IMG/VR virus record: IMGVR_UViG_3300028920_000022 | Location: 248,001-312,000 of that record | Direction: 5' to 3' (one strand) | DNA length: 64,000 nucleotides | Part shown: in pieces, positions 1 to 9,552 of the stretch | How the letters are laid out: every line of letters starts with the position of its first letter | Numbering within the stretch: the stretch's first letter is position 1 | Translations under genes and position numbers: made by a program | Notes under the pieces: generated by a model | Database searches by the model: none | What the model was told of the DNA's origin: nothing | The model's input: the letters and a program-made list of their open reading frames with translations, nothing else

Positions 1-1974
1 GATCAATACAAATATGAACAAGATAATCCTAATACGGCCAACCGTATTGTTCATGCATATAATGATTTACAAACAAATGTTCGTAGATTGTCTGATCATA
101 TTGAGAACTTGTTGAAAAAACCAACGGTGCAAGTAGCAGTAGGACCAGCTGAAGTTGACATGCCAATGGCTAAAACTGTTGGTAATGTCTGGACTACACC
201 ATCCACCAAATTAGCGTTGGTTGGTAGCTCTATGCCGAACAATCGTGGTCAGTGGTTGGCAAAACAGTTTGAACAATTGGCGGTTTTAGCCAGCAATAGT
301 AAGAAATGGAAACAAGGGGCTCCTATATTCAAACAAGCTGCAGTTTTTTGTCGCCAGTATGTTAATCAAAACCCAAAACATACATTATGGAACTTGTTAG
401 TTAATTTATCGAAAAACCCAAGTTTTAAATCATATTTTAGTGGTTGGGAAGTAAAAATTAAAAACCTTGAACAGTTGCGTAATATATTCACCAATGTTTT
501 GCCAGCTAAAATTAAATCAGCTAGCGTCAAATCAGTAGTAAAAACAGCCGGAATAGAAGATCCTGACTTCGTTCCCCCAGGAGCTACTCCAACTCCTAAA
601 AAACCAACAGCAAAACCAGGAAACCGACTGGTTCCCAAGAATAGACAAAAAGCTCAGTATGCTCGATATCAGGCGGCTATTGATAAATATCACGATGCAC
701 ACCCTGAGGCAGCTGATGCTGTTATTATAATGCAAAACCAATTGAATATGATTGCTAGTAAGCTTGGTGAAATCGCTAAGCAAACTAACAAGATTACGCA
801 AGAGGAGGTGGCATCGGCGGTAATTAAGTTATTAAGTACAGGTTTGAAGGGCGGAAGATCTGCTCAAGATTCGCTCGATGGATTATGGGCTACTTCTACT
901 AACACAGCTTTAGAAGCTTTACAAAACATAATTGATAAACTTTATCCAGACGATAATATTAAATTAAATAATAATATTAACTATAAATCTGCTAAGGATG
1001 CTGATATTGTGCAGGCAGCTCAGTCCAACAGTAGTATCATTGAAGACATTATTAAGAAAAAGTTTAAAGAAGATTTTGATGTAACGGTTCCAAATACACC
1101 CGACGAGCTAAAAGAAGAATCAACAACCAACCAACCAACCAACCAAATAAGACAAGGCGTTTGGGATCAATTAAACTATGCACGTATGCGTGCTGGCGGA
1201 GCTTGGACTGATATCTCAGAAAACCCTGATGTTTTTGTTCGTGATGATACATTTAATACATTAGATAAATTTGCAAACTTCTTAGAAAGCTATAGGTTGG
1301 CTTCTAGAAAAATGACCGGAGAACTTTGGGATAAATGGTTGGGCTGGTTTGCTATGCGAGCAAATTGGCTTAGAGATCATAACCAAGACACATCCAAAGG
1401 AAAGTACTTAACAGCGGTGCAGACTTTAAGATCTAAATTGCGTAAAGCTATTAGTAAATTAGGTGATAAAGCTGCTAATAATGCATTTTCTCCAGAAGAT
1501 TTAAAACACGCACTAGAAGCTGCAACTAAACCTCCAGGAATTACCCCACCAGCCCAGAGAAGCGACATGGCTTTACCTCTACAGGAAGGTACCGAGTTTG
1601 TTAATAATGTGCCAGATTTTCCTATCAGTAGCGGATCTATATCTTTGCGTAGACCATTTAACTTTCCAAGAACAAATGGAACCCAGTTGGGACGACAACT
1701 GTTGCAATATAACGGAGTTAACAAAAGCACTCTATACTTGAATGATGTGAATGAGTTTGTGATAAGTCAATTGGGTGGTCATAACACAAACCAACCACAT
1801 TTAGTTATTCAGGTTCTGCAGAATTTGAAACAGGACATTAATAACATTAAAAACAATTGGTCTGATCTGGCAGAACAACAAATGACTAGACCCCAAAGGG
1901 AAGCTAGAGTTGCTCCAGCTAGTACTTGGATTTATAATCTTAACGCTTTGATTCAAACAATAACCCATATGTAA
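1..1974 (+). CDS. Large hypothetical protein, 5'-truncated by the window; putative internal head protein
   Basis: Frame 1 is open from base 1 (DQYKYEQDNPNT...) into the ORF called at 88, so the true start lies upstream. It sits upstream of the capsid genes; no recognisable domain. Confidence 0.6.
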   Translation, partial: DQYKYEQDNPNTANRIVHAYNDLQTNVRRLSDHIENLLKKPTVQVAVGPAEVDMPMAKTVGNVWTTPSTKLALVGSSMPNNRGQWLAKQFEQLAVLASNSKKWKQGAPIFKQAAVFCRQYVNQNPKHTLWNLLVNLSKNPSFKSYFSGWEVKIKNLEQLRNIFTNVLPAKIKSASVKSVVKTAGIEDPDFVPPGATPTPKKPTAKPGNRLVPKNRQKAQYARYQAAIDKYHDAHPEAADAVIIMQNQLNMIASKLGEIAKQTNKITQEEVASAVIKLLSTGLKGGRSAQDSLDGLWATSTNTALEALQNIIDKLYPDDNIKLNNNINYKSAKDADIVQAAQSNSSIIEDIIKKKFKEDFDVTVPNTPDELKEESTTNQPTNQIRQGVWDQLNYARMRAGGAWTDISENPDVFVRDDTFNTLDKFANFLESYRLASRKMTGELWDKWLGWFAMRANWLRDHNQDTSKGKYLTAVQTLRSKLRKAISKLGDKAANNAFSPEDLKHALEAATKPPGITPPAQRSDMALPLQEGTEFVNNVPDFPISSGSISLRRPFNFPRTNGTQLGRQLLQYNGVNKSTLYLNDVNEFVISQLGGHNTNQPHLVIQVLQNLKQDINNIKNNWSDLAEQQMTRPQREARVAPASTWIYNLNALIQTITHM

Positions 1975-3104
1975 TGACTAAAACTATCTATAACGATGAT
2001 GATACCTTAATGAATGAGATTGCTCTGCTAGAAGCCGCATACTCCTTTGAGGATAGATCTGTTATTAAAAACGCCGGCATGCTCGATGATTTGAAAGGCG
2101 TCGGTCAGTATATCGTTGATGATGTTAAAGGTCAAATAGAACGTGAAGGTCCCTATGTCCTGTTAACTTACCTGGCTCCTTCCGCCTTGGGTTGGCTGTG
2201 GGGTCCACTGGGTTGGGGCGCTTGGTTTGCTACCTTTGTTGCCGACGCTTTGGGCGTCAGTATCGGTAGCGTTATGGCTCAAGCAGCTAAAGATACTAAA
2301 GCTAAATTAGATTCAGGTGAACCATTTACTATCGAAGATGCTGAGATAATTTCCGATAATGCAATTCGTGCCGGTGGAGGAGAAATAGTCCTAAGCTCCT
2401 TCCTGCCTCTCCGAACTATGATTAAAGATGGGAAATTGCTGAGCGAAGCTAGAGATGGGTTGGAAAAGTTTGGCGCCAGAATGCCTAAAGGTGTTCTTAG
2501 AGGCGTGTTTACTAAATTGATTGGCGCCGGCTCCCTGTCAAGAGCTAGAATGTTGTTCTTTGCCCTGCTTAAATGGGGTATCAAAAATGTGATTAAAGCC
2601 GCCGCCCTGCTGGGTGTGACAGGTTATGTTACCGGACAACCACCTACTGGACAACAAAAACCCTCAGAAGAAAAACGTGAGGCTCCTAGAATCTTGGAGA
2701 CCCCTAGATCAATTTCCTCTAAAAGAGCCCTCCCACCTAAACAAGTTAATAACCTTACCCCTAATCCAGGAGTCGGTGTTACACATAGAATTAATTCAGA
2801 TAATAGAGTCTGGATCGTTCCGCTGGTAGGAAATGGGACCGGTCTTAATAAAATCGCTAATACTATGTTCTTTTGGGCAAAACAGGTCTATCAGGAGGTT
2901 AATGAAACCCATAGAAGATTAATTATGACTTCTCCAGCATTTATCCAAATGGTCTCTGTCCTCGCTATGAACTATAGCCCTACCGCACCTATGGGTCTGG
3001 AAATGCCACATAATGAATATCTGAGCGCACCCATTCACTCCATTAAAGATGTGGTCGATTACTTTATCTGGCAAACCGCGCCCCAAATCAAAGGAAATTT
3101 ATGA
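1974..3104 (+). CDS. Hypothetical protein with two hydrophobic Gly/Trp-rich segments; putative internal virion/ejection protein
   Basis: 376 aa ORF whose start overlaps the previous stop. Hydrophobic stretches YVLLTYLAPSALGWLWGPLGWGAWFATFV and MLFFALLKWGIKNVIKAAALLGV. Role inferred from position only. Confidence 0.55.
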   Translation: MTKTIYNDDDTLMNEIALLEAAYSFEDRSVIKNAGMLDDLKGVGQYIVDDVKGQIEREGPYVLLTYLAPSALGWLWGPLGWGAWFATFVADALGVSIGSVMAQAAKDTKAKLDSGEPFTIEDAEIISDNAIRAGGGEIVLSSFLPLRTMIKDGKLLSEARDGLEKFGARMPKGVLRGVFTKLIGAGSLSRARMLFFALLKWGIKNVIKAAALLGVTGYVTGQPPTGQQKPSEEKREAPRILETPRSISSKRALPPKQVNNLTPNPGVGVTHRINSDNRVWIVPLVGNGTGLNKIANTMFFWAKQVYQEVNETHRRLIMTSPAFIQMVSVLAMNYSPTAPMGLEMPHNEYLSAPIHSIKDVVDYFIWQTAPQIKGNL

Positions 3105-3550
3105 GAAACGAAGTCTTTAATAACTATGTTAAAATTGCCCTCGAAAAAGGTTTGATTACTTCCGAAGCTCAGGAAACCCAAACCTCTAATAAAGATTACG
3201 CAGATACTATCAAAACCCTCTATAACCTGGATATCCCCCTTAACGATTCTAAAAAAGATATCATCGAACAGGCTCACCCAGACCCAGTAGTAATCGCTCC
3301 CTCCTATGATAAACTTAATGGTCTGGTCGAAAATGTCAGGGAACGCCAAAATGTTATGGTCGGTATCGCTAGAAAACCCACTAATGCTAACTTGACCATG
3401 CACCGTTACGCTGAGGCTTATCAAGATCTAGTCAATACTTTAGTCTCCCTCGGCTTTAAAATGAGTAATAGAAAACAAAAAGCCCTCCGCATCCTGGCTG
3501 ACGCTTGCTCATATAGACTTACTCAGAAACCTCCCTTTATTAAAAAATGA
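3101..3550 (+). CDS. Hypothetical protein (head region)
   Basis: 149 aa ORF, ATGA overlap with the upstream gene. Confidence 0.6.
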   Translation: MRNEVFNNYVKIALEKGLITSEAQETQTSNKDYADTIKTLYNLDIPLNDSKKDIIEQAHPDPVVIAPSYDKLNGLVENVRERQNVMVGIARKPTNANLTMHRYAEAYQDLVNTLVSLGFKMSNRKQKALRILADACSYRLTQKPPFIKK

Positions 3551-3846
3551 GCATTAACTCCGGTACCTCCCTGGATATGGAAACCGTCCGTGATGCCCCC
3601 TTTTCCGGCTCCGGTCAGGAAAATGGTCCCTACTACTTTGTCAAAAAACCCGACCTCCCCCTTAATGTTAATCCCGCTACCCCCCAACACCCCCACTTCC
3701 AAGAAGATGCCCTTACCCTCGATGATTCCCCAGAAAACTTATATAAAGACGTCCTGGAATTGCTGAATAAGGTCCGTAAACCTTCCCTCGCTTCCTGGAG
3801 TCGAGATGAACGTATTATAAAAATAACAAAAATTTTAATTTTCTAG
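3547..3846 (+). CDS. Hypothetical protein
   Basis: 99 aa ORF, ATGA overlap with the upstream gene; very C-rich sequence. Confidence 0.45.
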   Translation: MSINSGTSLDMETVRDAPFSGSGQENGPYYFVKKPDLPLNVNPATPQHPHFQEDALTLDDSPENLYKDVLELLNKVRKPSLASWSRDERIIKITKILIF

Positions 3847-3847
3847 G

Positions 3848-3860
3848 AATATGTTTGTAT
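3848..3860 (+). promoter_or_regulatory. Candidate phage late promoter motif AATA-N5-GTAT
   Basis: AATA TGTTT GTAT in the intergenic gap before the decoration/capsid operon; variant of the recurring AATA-N5-GCAT motif. Confidence 0.45.
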
Positions 3861-3931
3861 CCTTTTTGAATGTAAGTTTAAAGAGTAAGACAAGCGTAAA
3901 TTAACACACGCTTTTTATTTAAGGATTTGTT

Positions 3932-4633
3932 ATGGCACTTAAACCTTTACAAGCAGGTCGTGAGCCACTCGGTCAGTTCGATGGCTATGATGATGAAATT
4001 ACTCTTGCAGCTGGTGGCTTCAGGGGTGGCGAAGTTTGTACTCTACTCTATATCCCCGTCGGTGGAACAGATAGAGCTGCAAAGGATGCCGATGGCACAG
4101 ATGGTTATGTCGGAACTACAACTCAGTTGCGTCCCGTTGTAACTCGTACCCTGGCTGACGGTTCCCGTCCACTCTTCCTGTCTGATGATGGCTCCTCAGG
4201 TTACGGACAATTGTTCGGTGAACTGATTGGCGCTACCGTTGGTCAGATTGGTAATGCTCCCGGTACCGGTACAGCACTTGGTCCACACACTGCCGCAGGT
4301 AGTGGTAAGATCACTTGCTGGGATAAGCCCGGTCTGTATGCAGTAACCCTGGACGCAGTTGTCACTGGCGCTGCTGGTCTGAGTCCCGCCAACGGTACCC
4401 TCGCTGGTGGAGACCCTCTCTATGCTACCGCTACTGGTCTACTGACTCCAGTTGCAGCGAATGACTTCGATACCGTCGGTATCGTCGTGGCTCGTTTCAT
4501 TGAATTCCAGACTAATGGAAGCTTGGTTACGACTCCAAATACTTTGGTTTCGGCTCTGAACTCTCCATCAGGTACTGCCGCTGCGCGTGCAAACCTGACC
4601 CAGGCTGTGATTCATTTCAACCCAGAAACATAA
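3932..4633 (+). CDS. Putative capsid decoration/cement protein
   Basis: 233 aa, rich in Gly/Ala/Thr, immediately upstream of the major capsid gene with similar codon bias; 2 DGY motifs. Confidence 0.6.
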   Translation: MALKPLQAGREPLGQFDGYDDEITLAAGGFRGGEVCTLLYIPVGGTDRAAKDADGTDGYVGTTTQLRPVVTRTLADGSRPLFLSDDGSSGYGQLFGELIGATVGQIGNAPGTGTALGPHTAAGSGKITCWDKPGLYAVTLDAVVTGAAGLSPANGTLAGGDPLYATATGLLTPVAANDFDTVGIVVARFIEFQTNGSLVTTPNTLVSALNSPSGTAAARANLTQAVIHFNPET

Positions 4634-4645
4634 TAAATTAAATAT

Positions 4646-4704
4646 TGGGGCGGTCGCTGAGCGCCCGCCCCATTTAACAAATCTACCGGTTATATAACAG
4701 GTAG
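4646..4704 (+). promoter_or_regulatory. Two tandem RNA hairpins in the decoration-MCP intergenic region
   Basis: TGGGGCGG-T-CGC-TGA-GCG-C-CCGCCCCA (4646-4672) and CTACC-G-GTT-ATAT-AAC-A-GGTAG (4683-4704), directly upstream of the AGGAG RBS at 4711. Confidence 0.55.
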
Positions 4705-4720
4705 TAAATTAGGAGATAAA

Positions 4721-5740
4721 ATGGCAGGCGAGATTTTTAATAGTAAGGGCGAACTTAATGCAGCGAACCTGCAAGATGCCTTCACCCAAATGGCTAAATT
4801 CGCGTCTGTACTGGAAGAGAATACTCCGTCTAACCTGACCCTCGCAGGACAGCCCTCCATGAACGATGAGAAACGTGACTCCTTAATCGAGCGCGCTATC
4901 ATGAGCCAGGAAGGGAAGATTGCACTAGCTCAGGCGATGGCTAACCCTATCCGTCGGAACCTCGACTACCAGGGAATTGCTCGTAGAGCACTGGTAGTTG
5001 ATCCGCTGCCCCAGGGCGCACTTCCAGTATATGACCGAGATATTGATGTAGCAGCTGTTGTTGTTTCTAGCAATGGCACCGGTCCTGAAAGCCGTGTATT
5101 CGGCGACCGCGTTACGGTTCCTGAGTTTGAGATTTACTCAAACCCAACCGTGCGTATTGCCGAAGTTAAGCGGCGTCGGTTCAATGTGATCGACCGTGCA
5201 GTTCAGAAGAGTCGTCAAGAGATTATGGCACAGGAAGATGCCAACGTCTTCGCCGCGATTGATGCTGCCGCTGCGGTCGAAAACACTGTCTCGGATATCG
5301 CTGATAGCGGTATGCTTAAGGCTGACTTGGTCGACCTTAAAGTCCAGGTTGATCGCTGGGACCTCGTTACCACCAAGTTCTTCATGAATATTAATGAGTA
5401 CACTGATATTCTGAATTGGGCTTCCGGTGGCGGTCAGGGTGCCAACGGTGGCGAAATTGATCCCGTGACTCAGCGCGAAATCCTCCAGACTGGTCTCTAT
5501 GCCCATATCTGGGGCGCCGATATCATGGTGTCAAAGATCGTTCCTCCAGGTACCGTTTATTCCTGTGCAGACCCCGAATTTTTAGGAGTTATGCCGGTTC
5601 GGCAGGACATTGAGGTACTTCCAGCTGACGAGCCTAGGCGGCTAAGTCTAGGCTGGGTCATTAGTGAAATTATTGGCATTGGTATTGTCAACCCACGCGG
5701 TTGCGCCCGTGGCAATAAGAGCACTATCATTGGTGCGTAA
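4721..5740 (+). CDS. Major capsid protein (HK97-like fold)
   Basis: 339 aa with strong RBS and highly biased codon use, followed by a terminator. Segments such as IALAQAMANPIRRNLDYQGIARRALVVDPLPQG and GWVISEIIGIGIVNPRG resemble HK97-type capsid proteins of large uncultured phages (from memory). Confidence 0.85.
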   Translation: MAGEIFNSKGELNAANLQDAFTQMAKFASVLEENTPSNLTLAGQPSMNDEKRDSLIERAIMSQEGKIALAQAMANPIRRNLDYQGIARRALVVDPLPQGALPVYDRDIDVAAVVVSSNGTGPESRVFGDRVTVPEFEIYSNPTVRIAEVKRRRFNVIDRAVQKSRQEIMAQEDANVFAAIDAAAAVENTVSDIADSGMLKADLVDLKVQVDRWDLVTTKFFMNINEYTDILNWASGGGQGANGGEIDPVTQREILQTGLYAHIWGADIMVSKIVPPGTVYSCADPEFLGVMPVRQDIEVLPADEPRRLSLGWVISEIIGIGIVNPRGCARGNKSTIIGA

Positions 5741-5765
5741 TAACAGCAACTAGCTGAAAAAAATT

Positions 5766-5798
5766 AAAAAGGCGGTTTCTTAGGAGATCGCCTTTTTT
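5766..5798 (+). terminator. Rho-independent terminator after MCP
   Basis: AAAAA-GGCGGTTTC-TTAG-GAGATCGCC-TTTTTT: 9-bp stem, U-tract, and an A-tract on the other side (possibly bidirectional). Confidence 0.85.
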
Positions 5799-5829
5799 AT
5801 TTGGTAATTATGAACCTGCGCATCTAATT

Positions 5830-7695
5830 GTGGTAAATTTTATCGAGGGTAGAAACCGTACTAACATATTACACAATAATATGCACGATAAAATCAAATA
5901 TTACATTGAAAATGGGATGGCTAAATTTCGGCTGGCCACCAGATTAAAAATAGATAGCGAAGATCTGAATAAAATAATACAGAAACAAAACCTGCACATT
6001 GTAAAAGAAAAATTCGATAATAATAAAATAGATCATATTCTTAATTTATACGAAGACGGAATATCCGCTAAAGCTTTGGGTTTTAAATATAGTATAGATA
6101 AGAGACGAATAATGCGATGGGCTAAGGAGCGTGGTATTTTCAGAGATAAAAAAGAAGCAGGAAGAACGATTTATTTTGATGAGCACTTAATGGACGAAAT
6201 AATAACACCTGCAAAAGCATATTGGTTAGGTTTTTGTTATGCTGATGCTTATAATAGTGACGAAGCACTTAGACTTACTTTGGCAATTAAAGATATAGAT
6301 CATGTTAGAAAGTTTGCAAAATTTTTTGGTTTAGGTGAGGATAGAGTATTTTATGATGAAAAGTCGGCATGTTTACATTTGCATAGCAAATATTTGTGTG
6401 AAACAATGACAAAACATGGTTGTCCTAGAGCCAAATCGTTTATTATAAAATACCCTGAATGGTTGGATGAGTCTTTAACGGTTCATTTTATTCGTGGTAC
6501 TTTTGATGGTGATGGGTGTTTGACGTTTAGAAAAAGAAACCGAGAATGGAAATGGGACATTGCCGGCACTCATCATTTTTGCAATGGCGTTCGAGATGTT
6601 TTATTAAAAGAAGTGGGGATCAATACATATATTTATTGCATTTCTAAGACAAATAAAAATACATATGTTGTTAGCACATCTGGAAATGAAAAAATTGCCA
6701 CCATATGTGATTGGATGTACCAAGACGCTCATGATGAAATTATGCTTACCAGGAAATACGAAAAGTATTTGCAACTTAAAGAGCAACAAAGAAACCGCAA
6801 AATAGGTCGAGACAAGTACAACATCCCAGTAAAAGCCAAGAGAGACATTTTGACCCGATTAAAGAATGGGGAAGATCAGCAACAGATTGCCGAGGATCAT
6901 GGGATTCATCAGGTTTCAGTAAAGAAAATGGCAACCTACGTCAACAACTTCATCAACACCTATTCTGCTCCTTGTCTTTTGGGCAAGATGGCAAAGAATC
7001 CTACCTGGCATGGCAACATATTTTCCTGGACCGTTTCTAATAAAAACCATGCCGTTGTTGCCAACGATCACATTCTCACCAACACCGACATCGAATATTT
7101 AAAACAAATTCGCCCATTTTCTTTTCATTATATGTTTAAACCAAACATAGACATATTATCCCAGCATTTTGAAATAAGCAAAACCAAGATTAAATCTATT
7201 TTATTAAACGTATCTGAGATAGATGTTACAGGAAACAAGGGAAAGACATTTAGGAATTATATAAATCGATATTCGGGATATGATATTAAGGAAGAGTTAG
7301 GGAATATAGGGGACGCGAAGGATATGATAGATCGGTGGTCGGAGACTATGGGGGAGAAATACTTCAGGGATTTTTCTGGCAAGAATCTATATTTCTTTCA
7401 AAACAATTATCATCAAGATTGCGAATGTATTTTTGTATATGACAAAGACAAATTAATATCATTTGGGGTAGCATCCCCTGGAGCAAAGAGTGTATATGTA
7501 ATAGGGAAGGCATTAGCGCAGGAATATCCCGGGTTATCTGAGTTTACAGATATAAAGTTATATGAAAAGTTATTAAAGAAATATGGGGCATTTCAAATAA
7601 ATTTAGGGATGGCGACGAAGGGATTGATGGCGTACAAGAGCAAGTTTCCTGGGAGTATAGAGCAGGGGTCATACAATGGCAAAGTTATTGTTTGA
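5830..7695 (+). CDS. Fusion protein: HTH motifs + LAGLIDADG endonuclease domain + HTH + DUF2156 (LPG_synthase_C)-like GNAT-fold aminoacyl transferase domain
   Basis: LAGLIDADG helices AYWLGFCYADA and FIRGTFDGDGC. HTH ILTRLKNGEDQQQIAEDHGIHQVSVKKM. C-terminal GNKGKTFRNYINRY...GKALAQEYPGLSEF...INLG...KGLMAYKSKF parallels the DUF2156 pattern. ATG 5881 is an alternative start. Confidence 0.7.
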   Translation: MVNFIEGRNRTNILHNNMHDKIKYYIENGMAKFRLATRLKIDSEDLNKIIQKQNLHIVKEKFDNNKIDHILNLYEDGISAKALGFKYSIDKRRIMRWAKERGIFRDKKEAGRTIYFDEHLMDEIITPAKAYWLGFCYADAYNSDEALRLTLAIKDIDHVRKFAKFFGLGEDRVFYDEKSACLHLHSKYLCETMTKHGCPRAKSFIIKYPEWLDESLTVHFIRGTFDGDGCLTFRKRNREWKWDIAGTHHFCNGVRDVLLKEVGINTYIYCISKTNKNTYVVSTSGNEKIATICDWMYQDAHDEIMLTRKYEKYLQLKEQQRNRKIGRDKYNIPVKAKRDILTRLKNGEDQQQIAEDHGIHQVSVKKMATYVNNFINTYSAPCLLGKMAKNPTWHGNIFSWTVSNKNHAVVANDHILTNTDIEYLKQIRPFSFHYMFKPNIDILSQHFEISKTKIKSILLNVSEIDVTGNKGKTFRNYINRYSGYDIKEELGNIGDAKDMIDRWSETMGEKYFRDFSGKNLYFFQNNYHQDCECIFVYDKDKLISFGVASPGAKSVYVIGKALAQEYPGLSEFTDIKLYEKLLKKYGAFQINLGMATKGLMAYKSKFPGSIEQGSYNGKVIV

Positions 7696-8716
7696 TGCTC
7701 CGATTTATATTGGTGGAACAAAAATAACGAAACATTATATTCAATCATTAACCTATGAAGAGCGAGAAGAGCTAGTTGAGCCATTATTTTTATTATTTCG
7801 AGAGAATGGGTTTATTTATCCTGATGATGAGAGGAAGGTTAAATTAGAATATAAGAGGTTATTGGAGTATGAGCCAGATTTAAGTATAGACGAGGTATTT
7901 AATAATTCATCCTTAGCGACGAGGATATGCAAGCATTATTGTCATTCTTTTTATAAATCAACCGAACCTGGGAAGAAGACATTAATTGAGGTATTCAATG
8001 ATGACGAGTTATTGCGGAGGGTAATACGGAACCGATTAGGGATGGATTGGTATTATGCTGATGGGAAGGGGGATGGAGTAAACGAGGCATTTAATTTTAG
8101 TTTTAAGATGATGATACAGGGGATGAGGAGCATGCGATTGGTACCGAGTATTAGCATGTTCAAGCCCTCGATAGCGAAGTACATATGTTGTCGATATTCG
8201 AAGGAGGGGGATTTAGTGGGGGATTATTCGGCGGGATTTGGGGGAAGGATGTTAGGGGCGGTCAGTTGCGGTCGGAGGTATTTGGGGACGGATCCATTGA
8301 CGGCGGGGGAATTGGACATAATGGGGGAGGCATTGGAGCTGAGTGGGTATGAGGTAATGGGGGTAGGGTCTGAGTGTTTTCGAGGAGACAAAGGGAGCGT
8401 CGATTTATATTGGAGCAGCCCACCATATTACAATCAGGAGAAGTATTCTGACGATTTAAGTCAGGCGTACAATCGTGGGGAGGCATGGTTTTACGATGAG
8501 TACTGGTTGAGGACGTTAGAAAATGTGAGATATATGTTAAAGGCGGGTGGGTGGTTTGGGTTAAATGTGAGCAACAACCCAAAGATGTTGAGCATGGCAT
8601 CGGAAGTTTTTGGGGAGCCGGACGAAGTAATAAAGCTTCGGACGGTGAGGAGTCATTTAAACAAAACGGCGGGAATCACGAAGTTCGAGCCCATATACAT
8701 GTATAAAATCAAGTAG
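7676..8716 (+). CDS. Amino-type (N4-C or N6-A) DNA methyltransferase
   Basis: Motif X-like FKPSIAKYI, motif I DYSAGFGG, motif IV SSPPYY in the order X-I-IV after a long N-terminal region; overlaps the upstream gene by 20 nt. Confidence 0.85.
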   Translation: MAKLLFDAPIYIGGTKITKHYIQSLTYEEREELVEPLFLLFRENGFIYPDDERKVKLEYKRLLEYEPDLSIDEVFNNSSLATRICKHYCHSFYKSTEPGKKTLIEVFNDDELLRRVIRNRLGMDWYYADGKGDGVNEAFNFSFKMMIQGMRSMRLVPSISMFKPSIAKYICCRYSKEGDLVGDYSAGFGGRMLGAVSCGRRYLGTDPLTAGELDIMGEALELSGYEVMGVGSECFRGDKGSVDLYWSSPPYYNQEKYSDDLSQAYNRGEAWFYDEYWLRTLENVRYMLKAGGWFGLNVSNNPKMLSMASEVFGEPDEVIKLRTVRSHLNKTAGITKFEPIYMYKIK

Positions 8717-8717
8717 T

Positions 8718-8730
8718 AATATTGTCGCAT
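8718..8730 (+). promoter_or_regulatory. Candidate late promoter AATA-N5-GCAT
   Basis: AATA TTGTC GCAT right after the MTase stop, 9 nt before ATG 8740. Confidence 0.55.
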
Positions 8731-8739
8731 ATTTTCGAT

Positions 8740-9552
8740 ATGTCTATAAGCGATAAGAAACTACCATTAGATGGGAATGCTTGTCTTTTAAGCAAATTAG
8801 CTACAGATTATGAGACATTAGCGACAGACGAGGGATTATCTGTTGTAGAGGCATTATTACCTAAAACCAGGCGATACATTATACAGCACAAGCAGGAGCC
8901 GGGAGGGATAACGCGGGAGGCGCGGAAGGCGGTTTGGCGTTCGATGCAACCTGGGTTCAAGAAGGTTGCGTTTGACACTCGTAGAATTGATCAGGAGAAC
9001 GATCGGAATCCCCGCACTAATTTACAATATTGGCAACGGAGCCAGCAATTTTTGGATTCAGAGTTACAGGCAAAGATCAATATATTTGGTAAAGTATTGG
9101 GAGTATTAAAAGGAATCAAAGAATCATTTGGTACAGAGCCTGAATATTTTGAGAGTCACTCTCGTGTATTATATGATCAAATAGAGAGGGTATTAAGGAT
9201 CAAGCAAGGGGATCAAGAGATATTTCGACCGCAGGTAGCATATTTGGAGCAATTATTATATACACGTTATAGGTTGAGTACAGAAGAAATTGTACGCATG
9301 AGTGATGACATATTACGTCGTCGTATATTGGACAAGGACGAGGCATTATTAAAGCGAGGAGTTTACATTAACGAAACGGGCAGGGAGCAAGTCAAAATGT
9401 CGTCCAATCCTATTGTTATAGATGGGAACAAGCGCAACACGCAGCAGAACATAATTGAGGCGATATTTGGCAACACAGAATTTCGCAGGGTAGGGGAAAA
9501 GAAGGTAGAGAGGACGATAACCATTACCATATGTGATGAAGTAAAGGAATAG
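8740..9552 (+). CDS. Hypothetical protein
   Basis: In-frame ATG 8740 (MSISDKKL) preferred over TTG 8722 because it follows the promoter motif; helical, charged protein. Confidence 0.65.
   Translation: MSISDKKLPLDGNACLLSKLATDYETLATDEGLSVVEALLPKTRRYIIQHKQEPGGITREARKAVWRSMQPGFKKVAFDTRRIDQENDRNPRTNLQYWQRSQQFLDSELQAKINIFGKVLGVLKGIKESFGTEPEYFESHSRVLYDQIERVLRIKQGDQEIFRPQVAYLEQLLYTRYRLSTEEIVRMSDDILRRRILDKDEALLKRGVYINETGREQVKMSSNPIVIDGNKRNTQQNIIEAIFGNTEFRRVGEKKVERTITITICDEVKE

What the first reader, a model, noticed from the sequence alone, without database searches (positions are those of the whole stretch)
5830..7695. LAGLIDADG endonuclease fused in frame to a DUF2156/MprF-type aminoacyl-transferase domain
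Seen: one 621-aa ORF with HTH motifs, a two-motif LAGLIDADG domain, another HTH and a DUF2156-like GNAT domain. The LAGLIDADG part (about 5880-6780) is AT-rich and G>C, while 6900-7200 is C>G, suggesting a recent fusion. Established: DUF2156/LPG_synthase_C domains transfer amino acids from aminoacyl-tRNA in MprF-type enzymes, and LAGLIDADG domains can be domesticated as DNA-binding modules (WhiA). Inference: either a homing endonuclease hitch-hiking on a transferase gene, or a DNA-targeted tRNA-dependent aminoacylating enzyme. I have not seen this architecture described.
Basis: partly seen in the sequence, partly recalled or inferred. Interest (0 to 1): 0.65.

Follow-up and report, generated by a model that had tools for sequence, protein, structure and literature searches.

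The report
Homing endonuclease run-on into phage transferase
A selfish DNA-cutting gene that sits behind the capsid gene of a giant marine-sediment phage has lost its stop codon and now reads straight into the phage's own MprF-like (DUF2156) transferase gene. The fusion is real, but it is best read as a mobile element riding on a host gene, not as a new DNA-targeted enzyme.

Summary
ORF 5830-7695 (+) is real: HTH-HTH, a two-motif LAGLIDADG core, HTH, then a DUF2156-type tandem-GNAT domain. Both halves give confident models. The C-half is closest to stand-alone DUF2156 and MprF synthase domains, the N-half to LAGLIDADG homing endonucleases.

In related phage-G-like jumbo phages the usual order is capsid gene, terminator, 0-4 varied homing-endonuclease genes, a separate ~250-aa DUF2156-like gene, then an overlapping DNA-methylase-like gene. 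The same endonuclease family occurs alone (55 clusters), fused to the methylase-like gene (57) or fused to the DUF2156-like gene (8). These states switch repeatedly on its tree. Both catalytic Asp are kept in essentially all of them. In unfused relatives the endonuclease stop overlaps the transferase start (ATGA). The window keeps the whole endonuclease C-terminal HTH and the transferase's own ATG (6928) in one frame.

The best explanation is therefore a free-standing, probably active homing endonuclease fused by run-on to a resident gene. A domesticated DNA-targeting transferase is not excluded. The substrate of the phage DUF2156 family is unknown, and that is the more interesting open question after the finding that phage Mu Mom modifies DNA with charged tRNA. 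No group I intron RNA or intein (Hint) match was found, and an independent assembly argues against an artefact.

The parts
4721..5740 (+). Major capsid protein gene (339 aa), the conserved left neighbour of the endonuclease slot
   Evidence: phrog_2522 major head protein, E 9.9e-79. 52% identity to Bacillus phage G gp27. 70-90% identity to the capsid genes of the related loci.
5766..5805 (+). Terminator-like hairpin (14 pairs) plus T-run after the capsid gene
   Evidence: A hairpin followed by a T-run is visible after the capsid stop codon in the 13 related loci printed.
5830..7695 (+). The 621-aa fused ORF (GTG 5830; likely real start ATG 5881; stop TGA 7693-7695)
   Evidence: No Shine-Dalgarno-like motif lies before 5830, 5881 or 5917.
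5881..6927 (+). Homing-endonuclease module: two N-terminal HTH-like modules (5923-5985, 6019-6132), LAGLIDADG core (6208-6720), C-terminal HTH (6829-6924)
   Evidence: AF2 pLDDT 90.5. Foldseek top matches are LAGLIDADG endonucleases: TliVMA intein endonuclease domain, I-Tsp061I, I-AniI, I-GzeII, I-OnuI. PHROG 4645.
6220..6252 (+). LAGLIDADG motif 1 (aa 131-141) with catalytic Asp139
   Evidence: Asp139 is invariant in 101/101 aligned relatives of all three architectures.
6487..6519 (+). LAGLIDADG motif 2 (aa 220-230) with catalytic Asp228
   Evidence: Asp228 is kept in 100/101 relatives.
6925..6969 (+). Fusion junction. The end of the endonuclease C-terminal HTH runs directly into ATG 6928 (Met367), which aligns with the start codon of stand-alone DUF2156-like genes
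   Evidence: Junction alignment. Unfused relatives L015 and L031 have an ATGA stop/start overlap at this point. No SD-like motif lies before 6928.
6928..7695 (+). DUF2156-type tandem-GNAT domain (aa 367-621), orthologue of stand-alone ~250-aa phage proteins
   Evidence: 39 stand-alone relatives at 38-61% identity over ~100% of the domain. AF2 pLDDT 92.4. Foldseek and VIA matches to DUF2156/MprF, then Sbb17, then FemX.
7231..7269 (+). Conserved basic helix (aa 468-480; Gly468, Arg475 and Asn479 invariant), candidate tRNA acceptor-stem binding helix
   Evidence: Conservation. The role is inferred from the description of aa-tRNA transferases in PMC6103681. It has not been superposed residue by residue.
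7676..8716 (+). DNA N4/N6-methylase-like gene (346 aa; motif I 8219-8245, SPPY 8417-8428). It overlaps the fused ORF by 20 nt and is the conserved partner of the DUF2156-like gene
   Evidence: Pfam N6_N4_Mtase, 21.8 bits, below cut-off. Atlas neighbours are viral N6_N4_Mtase / N4-cytosine methylase clusters. It directly follows the DUF2156-like gene in most loci. It is fused to the same endonuclease family in 57 clusters.

Best explanation
The window is part of a complete 459-kb jumbo phage from marine sediment, distantly related to Bacillus phage G. Behind its capsid gene lies a slot that homing-endonuclease genes invade again and again in this phage clade.

In this genome the slot holds one free-standing LAGLIDADG endonuclease gene with three HTH modules. 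Its active site is intact, so it probably still cuts endonuclease-free alleles of co-infecting relatives and is copied in by repair (inferred). In relatives this gene ends with a stop codon that overlaps the ATG of the next resident gene, a stand-alone DUF2156-type tandem-GNAT protein. That protein is in turn translationally coupled to a DNA-methylase-like gene.

In this genome a small change at the endonuclease's 3' end removed the stop and set both genes in one frame. The result is a single polypeptide with the endonuclease in front and the transferase behind. The transferase part has no ribosome-binding site of its own, so it is most likely made as this fusion and does whatever the stand-alone protein does (inferred). 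The methylase-like gene follows through a 20-nt overlap.

By fold, the transferase is an aminoacyl-tRNA-dependent transferase of the DUF2156/MprF/Fem kind without a membrane domain. Its acceptor substrate is unknown.
For: The fusion is real. An independent Logan contig (94.8 kb, depth 24) spans 5700-7800 with 0 differences. Seven other proteins from other assemblies have the same architecture at 44-50% identity.

The transferase is normally separate. There are 39 stand-alone clusters. Loci L001, L010-L023 and L031 show it as its own gene.

The endonuclease is an optional insert in a hot spot.
- The slot between the capsid gene and the transferase holds 0-4 ORFs of the LAGLIDADG_2, LAGLIDADG_3, HNH and HNH_3 families in different loci.
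- L021 holds a frameshifted remnant of this endonuclease family.
- Clustering of endonuclease genes next to capsid genes is known (PMC10448857).

The same endonuclease family occurs alone (55 clusters), fused to the methylase-like gene (57) or fused to the DUF2156-like gene (8). On its tree, well-supported branches force at least 3 switches for the DUF2156 fusion and at least 6 for the methylase fusion. P0006 (fused to DUF2156) is sister to P0063 (fused to methylase) with support 99.

The active site is kept: Asp139 in 101/101 and Asp228 in 100/101 relatives, in all three classes. The fold is that of LAGLIDADG endonucleases.

Junction. The window keeps the full C-terminal HTH and the transferase's ATG. 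The other fused relatives have lost about 35 aa of that HTH, so the window's fusion arose independently. Unfused L015 and L031 show the ATGA overlap.

No group I intron RNA match was found and there is no intein domain hit. The transferase fold is DUF2156: Z 17.6 to 2HQY, 15-16 to MprF, 15 to Sbb17/Sba18, 12-13 to FemX.
Against: Fusions to the methylase-like gene are as common as stand-alone endonucleases, and one clade of 36 tree rows is almost entirely fused (33 fused, 3 alone). That stability could mean the fused state is selected, not accidental.

Neither nuclease activity nor homing has been shown. No endonuclease-free allele with a simple capsid-transferase junction was found, so no target site could be proposed.

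No RNA or protein data exist, so it is unknown whether the fusion protein, an internally initiated transferase, or both are made.

Only contigs, not raw reads, could be laid on the junction, and the contig comes from what may be the source sample.
Confidence: 0.68

Rival explanations
1. Domesticated targeting module. The LAGLIDADG/HTH part serves mainly as a sequence-specific DNA-binding domain. It brings the DUF2156 transferase (and, in relatives, the methylase) to DNA, giving a DNA-directed aminoacyl-tRNA-dependent modifying enzyme.
For: Fusions of this module to a DNA-methylase-like enzyme are frequent and stable. Viral methylases of this family also carry other N-terminal DNA-binding domains, namely ParB_N and LAGLIDADG_2. 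Phage Mu Mom shows that a viral GNAT can use Gly-tRNA to modify adenine in dsDNA (PMC13219725). The transferase is basic (pI ~9), has a conserved basic helix, and is coupled to a DNA-methylase-like gene.
Against: Both catalytic Asp are invariant, unlike WhiA-type domesticated LAGLIDADG proteins. The transferase stands alone in 39 of about 47 clusters, so it does not need the module. The partner and the fused state switch repeatedly. Unrelated endonuclease families occupy the same slot. The window's junction looks like a simple loss of a stop codon. Mom is a single GNAT with an HTH-like insertion, not a DUF2156 tandem GNAT.
Confidence: 0.14
2. Fused in the DNA only. The run-on ORF has little consequence because the transferase is still made on its own from the retained ATG 6928, or the fusion protein is cleaved or inactive. 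The two activities then stay physically separate, as in relatives.
For: The ancestral initiator ATG is kept exactly at the junction. Endonuclease genes are often poorly translated, and no SD-like motif precedes 5830, 5881 or 5917.
Against: ATG 6928 has no SD-like motif either, whereas many genes in the window have one. In unfused relatives the gene seems to depend on ATGA coupling to the endonuclease ORF. Other lineages keep fused forms that have no Met at the aligned junction position (P0003-P0008), so fused proteins are evidently tolerated.
Confidence: 0.13
3. Assembly or sequencing artefact. A one-base error near 6900-6930 merges two separate genes.
For: The junction lies in an A-rich run, with a TAA in the +1 frame 6 nt before ATG 6928. 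Only one contig carries this exact protein. No raw reads were available.
Against: A second assembler's contig at depth 24 is identical over 5700-7800. Fused forms exist in seven other proteins from independent samples.
Confidence: 0.03

Closest known systems
Free-standing phage homing endonuclease genes clustered next to essential genes ('HEG islands'; PMC10448857)
   Same: An optional nuclease gene in a fixed slot beside the capsid gene. Several nuclease families share the slot. Decayed remnants are present. No group I intron RNA or intein domain was detected.
   Different: Here the LAGLIDADG gene abuts the start codon of the next gene and is repeatedly fused in frame to it, giving two-function polypeptides.
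In-frame, non-splicing homing insertions in phage genes (ShiLan element with a hidden HNH in a phage methylase; PMC11855218)
   Same: A homing element tolerated inside or at a host reading frame without intron or intein splicing, and also associated with a phage DNA methylase.
   Different: ShiLan is an internal insertion and its nuclease is read in another frame. Here the nuclease is N-terminal, in the same frame as the host protein, and also occurs as a separate gene.
DUF2156 / LPG_synthase_C aminoacyl-tRNA transferases (MprF synthase domain; stand-alone DUF2156 2HQY; Sbb17/Sba18; more distantly FemX)
   Same: Tandem-GNAT fold over the whole 246 aa: Z 17.6 to 2HQY, 15-16 to MprF, 15 to Sbb17/Sba18. 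Pfam PF09924 hit. A conserved basic helix is present.
   Different: No membrane or flippase domain and no TM segment. Sequence identity is only 8-17%. It is a phage family coupled to a DNA-methylase-like gene. Substrate and tRNA dependence are untested.
Phage Mu Mom (tRNA-dependent DNA adenine modification; PMC13219725)
   Same: A viral GNAT-superfamily enzyme. It sets the precedent that charged tRNA can donate an amino acid to DNA.
   Different: Mom is a dimer of single GNAT domains with an HTH-like insertion. No sequence or family link to the window's domain was found, and nothing here shows DNA as the acceptor.
WhiA (domesticated LAGLIDADG plus C-terminal HTH)
   Same: A LAGLIDADG core followed by a C-terminal HTH. 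WhiA (3HYI) appears among the fold matches at rank 35.
   Different: By established knowledge, WhiA has lost the catalytic acidic residues. This family keeps both Asp almost invariantly.

Membership tests
LAGLIDADG homing endonuclease (monomeric, two-motif) | Two LAGLIDADG motifs in one chain, each ending in a catalytic acidic residue | tested here: met
   Motifs at aa 131-141 and 220-230. Asp139 is kept in 101/101 and Asp228 in 100/101 relatives.
LAGLIDADG homing endonuclease (monomeric, two-motif) | Duplicated alpha-beta-beta-alpha-beta-beta-alpha fold | tested here: met
   AF2 pLDDT 90.5. Foldseek E 6e-8 to 1e-5 to the TliVMA endonuclease domain, I-Tsp061I, I-AniI, I-GzeII and I-OnuI.
LAGLIDADG homing endonuclease (monomeric, two-motif) | Profile match above the curated threshold | tested here: met
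   PF14528 at 22.8 bits against a 22.5 cut-off, which is marginal. PHROG 4645 at E 2e-43. The genome search gave 25.8 bits, over the cut-off.
LAGLIDADG homing endonuclease (monomeric, two-motif) | Mobile: present or absent at a fixed genomic site among relatives | tested here: met
   The slot behind the capsid gene is occupied by this family, by other families, or by a decayed remnant in different loci.
LAGLIDADG homing endonuclease (monomeric, two-motif) | Site-specific double-strand cleavage of the endonuclease-free allele | not testable with these tools
   Needs an enzyme assay. No simple endonuclease-free junction was found from which to predict a target.
Intron- or intein-encoded homing endonuclease | Embedded in a group I/II intron RNA or flanked by Hint splicing blocks | tested here: not met
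   No Rfam intron match in 3500-9500, even at E<=1. No Hint or intein Pfam hit at E<=1. The ORF lies between complete genes.
DUF2156 / LPG_synthase_C (PF09924) | Pfam profile at or above the gathering score | tested here: met
   The C-half alone scores 29.2 bits against a 27.5 cut-off. The whole ORF scores 26.5 bits, just under. Many stand-alone relatives carry a precomputed PF09924 hit.
DUF2156 / LPG_synthase_C (PF09924) | Tandem-GNAT fold closest to solved DUF2156 domains | tested here: met
   VIA Z 17.6 to 2HQY (239 aligned), 15-16.3 to MprF/L-PGS/A-PGS, 12-13 to FemX, about 11-12.5 to other GNATs. Foldseek E 2e-10, TM 0.65-0.71.
DUF2156 / LPG_synthase_C (PF09924) | Basic helix that binds the tRNA acceptor stem (common to aa-tRNA transferases; PMC6103681) | tested here: inconclusive
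   A conserved basic helix exists at aa 468-480. Its equivalence to the MprF/FemX helix was not checked by residue-level superposition.
DUF2156 / LPG_synthase_C (PF09924) | Aminoacyl-tRNA-dependent transfer | not testable with these tools
   Needs biochemistry.
MprF (bifunctional aminoacyl-phosphatidylglycerol synthase/flippase) | N-terminal integral-membrane flippase domain | tested here: not met
   No LPG_synthase_TM hit. The maximum 19-residue hydropathy is 0.92, so there is no TM segment. Stand-alone relatives are about 250 aa.
WhiA-type domesticated LAGLIDADG DNA-binding protein | Loss of the catalytic acidic residues | tested here: not met
   Both Asp are retained almost invariantly in stand-alone and fused forms.
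Mom-type tRNA-dependent DNA-modifying GNAT | Single GNAT domain with HTH-like insertion; essential R111/S124 (PMC13219725) | tested here: not met
   The model is a tandem GNAT of the DUF2156 type. No Mom-related family appeared in the Pfam or PHROG scans. Residue equivalents were not examined.

The most novel reading that the evidence does not exclude
The conserved DUF2156-like plus methylase-like gene pair behind the capsid gene may be a tRNA-dependent nucleic-acid (or virion) modification module of jumbo phages, a second Mom-like chemistry built on a DUF2156 scaffold. On this reading, the recurrent in-frame fusions of an intact LAGLIDADG nuclease to either enzyme are functional. The fusion would tether the modifying enzyme to DNA, or would couple 'modify self, cut unmodified rival' in one polypeptide during phage-phage competition.
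Probability: 0.1. Interest if true: 0.85.

Novelty: new variant of a known kind. Interest (0 to 1): 0.45.

Why it matters
The result turns an apparent exotic enzyme into a clear, well-replicated example of how selfish nucleases settle against the start codon of resident phage genes and repeatedly fuse with them. That is one route by which new multi-domain proteins arise.

It also brings out two things I found in no paper of the searched library:
- A sizeable viral family of membrane-free DUF2156 (aminoacyl-tRNA-transferase-fold) proteins that is tightly coupled to a DNA-methylase-like gene.
- A large set of LAGLIDADG-methylase fusions whose nuclease site is intact.

Phage Mu Mom is now known to use charged tRNA to modify DNA. 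This makes the acceptor substrate of the viral DUF2156 family a concrete, testable question.

Tried and rejected
- Megablast of 5000-9000 against GenBank phages found no match.
- tblastn of the C-half against phages found no match even at E<=1. Cultured phages in that collection, phage G included, seem to lack it.
- A PDB sequence-profile search with the C-half alignment gave only chance hits at E~0.7. The link to DUF2156 is visible only through Pfam and through the fold.
- The Rfam scan gave no intron or other RNA. One L20-leader hit is far below threshold and lies over the terminator.
- The sigma-70 promoter scan found no more sites than in shuffled sequence.
- Sequencing runs: no RNA run and no raw reads were available, only Logan contigs. 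X2-X4 hold 151-nt pieces that do not bridge the junction.
- Base composition as evidence for a recent fusion was rejected, because the skew dip recurs in unfused relatives.
- Residue-level mapping onto the MprF/FemX catalytic and tRNA-binding residues was not done. No solved-chain sequences or structural alignments were available to me.
- The large exhaustive protein search and the complex prediction were not used. The word search and the family scans settled the architecture question, and I make no claim of binding.
- No alternative genetic code was applied, although the genome carries a TAA-reading tRNA, because the window reads cleanly under table 11.
Full report
**What is there.** The window is bases 248,001-312,000 of a 458,729-bp virus record that CheckV rates 100% complete. 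It comes from a marine sediment metagenome. Nearly all long ORFs are on the + strand. The gene at 4721-5740 is the major capsid protein (phrog_2522, E 1e-78; 52% identity to Bacillus phage G gp27). The element is therefore a jumbo phage distantly related to phage G.

After the capsid gene comes a strong terminator-like hairpin at 5766-5797. The ORF in question follows at 5830-7695, with a GTG start, a TGA stop and 621 aa. Homologues begin at the position of aa 16-20, and aa 1-13 are modelled with pLDDT <50. ATG 5881 is therefore the more likely start. The next gene (7676-8716) overlaps the ORF by 20 nt.

**Domain check.**
- PHROG 4645 'endonuclease' covers aa 35-317 (E 2e-43).
- Pfam LAGLIDADG_3 covers aa 219-291, just above threshold, and there are weak HTH hits at aa 59-82 and 335-364.
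- LPG_synthase_C (DUF2156) covers aa 458-596. It scores 26.5 bits in the whole ORF and 29.2 bits (cut-off 27.5) when the C-half is scanned alone.
- An AlphaFold model of aa 1-366, built on 49 relatives, has pLDDT 90.5. It shows helical HTH-like modules at aa 32-52, 64-101 and 334-365 around a duplicated alpha/beta core. Its best PDB matches are LAGLIDADG endonucleases: the TliVMA intein endonuclease domain, I-Tsp061I, I-AniI, I-GzeII and I-OnuI. WhiA is at rank 35.
- A model of aa 376-621, built on 38 sequences, has pLDDT 92.4 and pTM 0.87. It matches MprF synthase domains, stand-alone DUF2156 proteins, the aa-tRNA-dependent peptide synthases Sbb17/Sba18 and FemX by Foldseek (E 2e-10 to 1e-6).
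- By VIA-align the order is 2HQY (Z 17.6, 239 residues aligned), then MprF/L-PGS/A-PGS (15-16.3), Sbb17/Sba18 (15), FemX (12-13) and generic GNATs (about 11-12.5).

**Composition.** The endonuclease part has GC 0.34 and skew +0.22. Positions 6900-7199 have skew -0.279, in the lowest 0.6% of windows. But the whole ORF and the start of the next gene are AT-rich. In addition, the first 270 nt of the DUF2156-like gene has low or negative skew in several unfused relatives as well. Composition therefore does not date the fusion.

**Is the fusion real?** A Logan contig of 94.8 kb at depth 24, made by a different assembler, matches 5700-7800 without a single difference or gap. It may come from the same sample, and only contigs were available, so this is not read-level proof. 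Independently, seven other proteins from other samples have the same endonuclease-DUF2156 architecture at 44-50% identity over 97% of the query. One of them (P0003, 908 aa) carries two endonuclease modules in tandem. An artefact is unlikely.

**What the relatives show.**
- The C-half has 39 stand-alone relatives of about 250 aa, at 38-61% identity over the full length. The Atlas places them in viral clusters of about 90-140 members. The nearest cellular neighbours are soluble PF09924 proteins of archaea and candidate-phyla bacteria.
- Among 120 relatives of the N-half, 55 are endonuclease alone, 57 are fused to a homologue of the window's next gene (the methylase-like protein; 53% identity in P0015), and 8 are fused to the DUF2156-like protein.
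- In 23 related loci the order is capsid gene, terminator, a variable stretch, the DUF2156-like gene, then the methylase-like gene. The last two usually overlap by a few bases.
- The variable stretch holds nothing, one ORF or up to four ORFs of the LAGLIDADG_2, LAGLIDADG_3, HNH or HNH_3 families. L021 holds a frameshifted remnant of this very endonuclease family. In L005-7 and L010 the capsid gene itself is interrupted by LAGLIDADG ORFs.

This is the pattern of a homing-endonuclease hot spot next to an essential gene, as described for other phages (PMC10448857).

**The endonuclease is not a relic.** The Asp that ends each LAGLIDADG motif (Asp139, Asp228) is kept in 101/101 and 100/101 aligned relatives, equally in stand-alone and fused forms. 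A quick maximum-likelihood tree of the modules shows that the architecture is clustered but switches often. Well-supported branches force at least 3 changes for the DUF2156 fusion, at least 6 for the methylase fusion and at least 5 for the stand-alone state. P0006 (fused to DUF2156) is sister to P0063 (fused to methylase) with support 99. The window's module is sister (support 93) to the stand-alone P0059. The careful tree search did not finish, so these figures come from the quick tree.

**Junction anatomy.** Stand-alone endonucleases end with a C-terminal HTH and a short tail. In L015/L016 and L031 their TGA overlaps the ATG of the DUF2156-like gene as ATGA. The window keeps the complete C-terminal HTH (aa 334-365). 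Directly after it, in the same frame, comes an ATG (6928, Met367) that aligns with the initiator of the stand-alone proteins. The other fused proteins (P0003-P0008) have lost about 35 aa of that HTH. Together with the tree, this means the window's fusion arose separately and is structurally 'fresh'. Neither the ORF start nor ATG 6928 is preceded by a Shine-Dalgarno-like motif, whereas many genes of the window have one. The transferase part therefore most likely depends on translation of the fused frame. This is an inference.

**How it most likely works.**
- Shown: the domain identities, the intact catalytic residues, the mobility of the endonuclease at this slot, the separate existence of the transferase, and the anatomy of the junction.
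- Inferred: the endonuclease cuts endonuclease-free alleles of related phages in mixed infection and is copied in by repair. Loss of its stop made one polypeptide. The transferase part works as in relatives, and the methylase-like gene is translated by coupling.
- On the transferase: it has the fold of aminoacyl-tRNA-dependent transferases and a conserved basic helix at aa 468-480. Such a helix binds the tRNA acceptor stem in MprF, Fem and L/F transferases (PMC6103681). I could not verify the equivalence residue by residue.
- It has no membrane domain, so it is not an MprF. Its acceptor could be lipid, cell-wall precursor, protein or nucleic acid. This remains open.

**Rivals.**
- The domestication reading (a DNA-targeted transferase) draws some support from three things: the abundance and stability of the methylase fusions, other DNA-binding domains on related viral methylases, and the Mom precedent for tRNA-dependent DNA modification (PMC13219725).
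- Against it stand the intact nuclease site, the predominance of stand-alone transferases, the switching of partners, and the presence of unrelated nucleases in the same slot.
- Internal initiation at 6928 and a sequencing artefact are the other alternatives. Neither is favoured.

**Comparison and novelty.**
- The endonuclease is a member of the LAGLIDADG family and is free-standing: no intron RNA and no intein domain.
- The C-half is a member of the DUF2156 superfamily, but it is neither an MprF nor a Mom.
- The nearest precedent for a homing element tolerated in frame with a phage gene is the ShiLan/HNH insertion in a phage methylase (PMC11855218). That is an internal insertion, read in a different frame.
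- I found no paper on phage DUF2156 proteins, or on LAGLIDADG fusions to DUF2156 or to methylases in jumbo phages. The Atlas does hold an automatically named cluster of LAGLIDADG_2-methylase fusions.

I rate the finding a new variant of a known kind and of moderate interest. The fusion itself is explained. The unexplained parts are the viral DUF2156 family coupled to a methylase-like gene, and the long-lived nuclease-methylase fusions.

Noticed in passing
window 7676-8716 (+): A DNA N4/N6-methylase-like gene (motif I at aa 182-190, SPPY at aa 248-251) overlaps the fused ORF by 20 nt. In 57 relative clusters this gene, not the DUF2156-like one, is fused behind the same LAGLIDADG module. One tree clade of 36 rows is almost entirely fused (33 fused, 3 alone).
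   Followed up: partly
G000 outside the window: c[451588-451662]: ARAGORN finds 16 tRNA genes in the phage genome and none in the window. One has anticodon TTA, which would read the TAA stop codon. The window's genes read cleanly under table 11, so no recoding was assumed.
   Followed up: no
L005/L006/L007 about 1498-3519; L010 63-3027: In these relatives the capsid gene itself is split into pieces by inserted LAGLIDADG ORFs (LAGLIDADG_2 in L005-7). This suggests introns or other insertions inside the capsid gene. Splicing was not examined.
   Followed up: no
L021 about 5467-5752 (gap between capsid and DUF2156-like genes): A frameshifted remnant of the N-terminal HTH region of this endonuclease family, consistent with decay after invasion.
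   Followed up: partly
L001/L003 (3056-5008 in L001) and L005 3721-5007: A second, divergent methylase-like paralogue (35-37% identity) lies in the same slot, fused behind a distant LAGLIDADG or HTH module. L001 also has a class-V aminotransferase gene just downstream of the pair.
   Followed up: no
L010 3067-6002: Four nuclease ORFs in a row sit between the capsid and DUF2156-like genes: LAGLIDADG 381 aa, HNH 198 aa, LAGLIDADG_2 244 aa and LAGLIDADG_3 167 aa. This is an extreme endonuclease island.
   Followed up: partly
G000:244981-245193 and G000:353528-353812 (outside the window): There are two more LAGLIDADG_3 matches in the genome. One lies in a 273-aa frame about 3 kb before the window. 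The other (75.8 bits) lies inside a 1047-aa open frame and may be an intein.
   Followed up: no
window 5898-6182 and 6927-7324: 151-nt contig pieces, 96-100% identical, occur in wetland, marsh and salt-marsh metagenomes from other studies. This phage or close kin is therefore not confined to the source sample.
   Followed up: no
window 3932-5740: The capsid gene and the gene before it have GC 0.51-0.52, against 0.41 for the window and 0.35 for the fused ORF. This is a local high-GC patch in the head genes.
   Followed up: no
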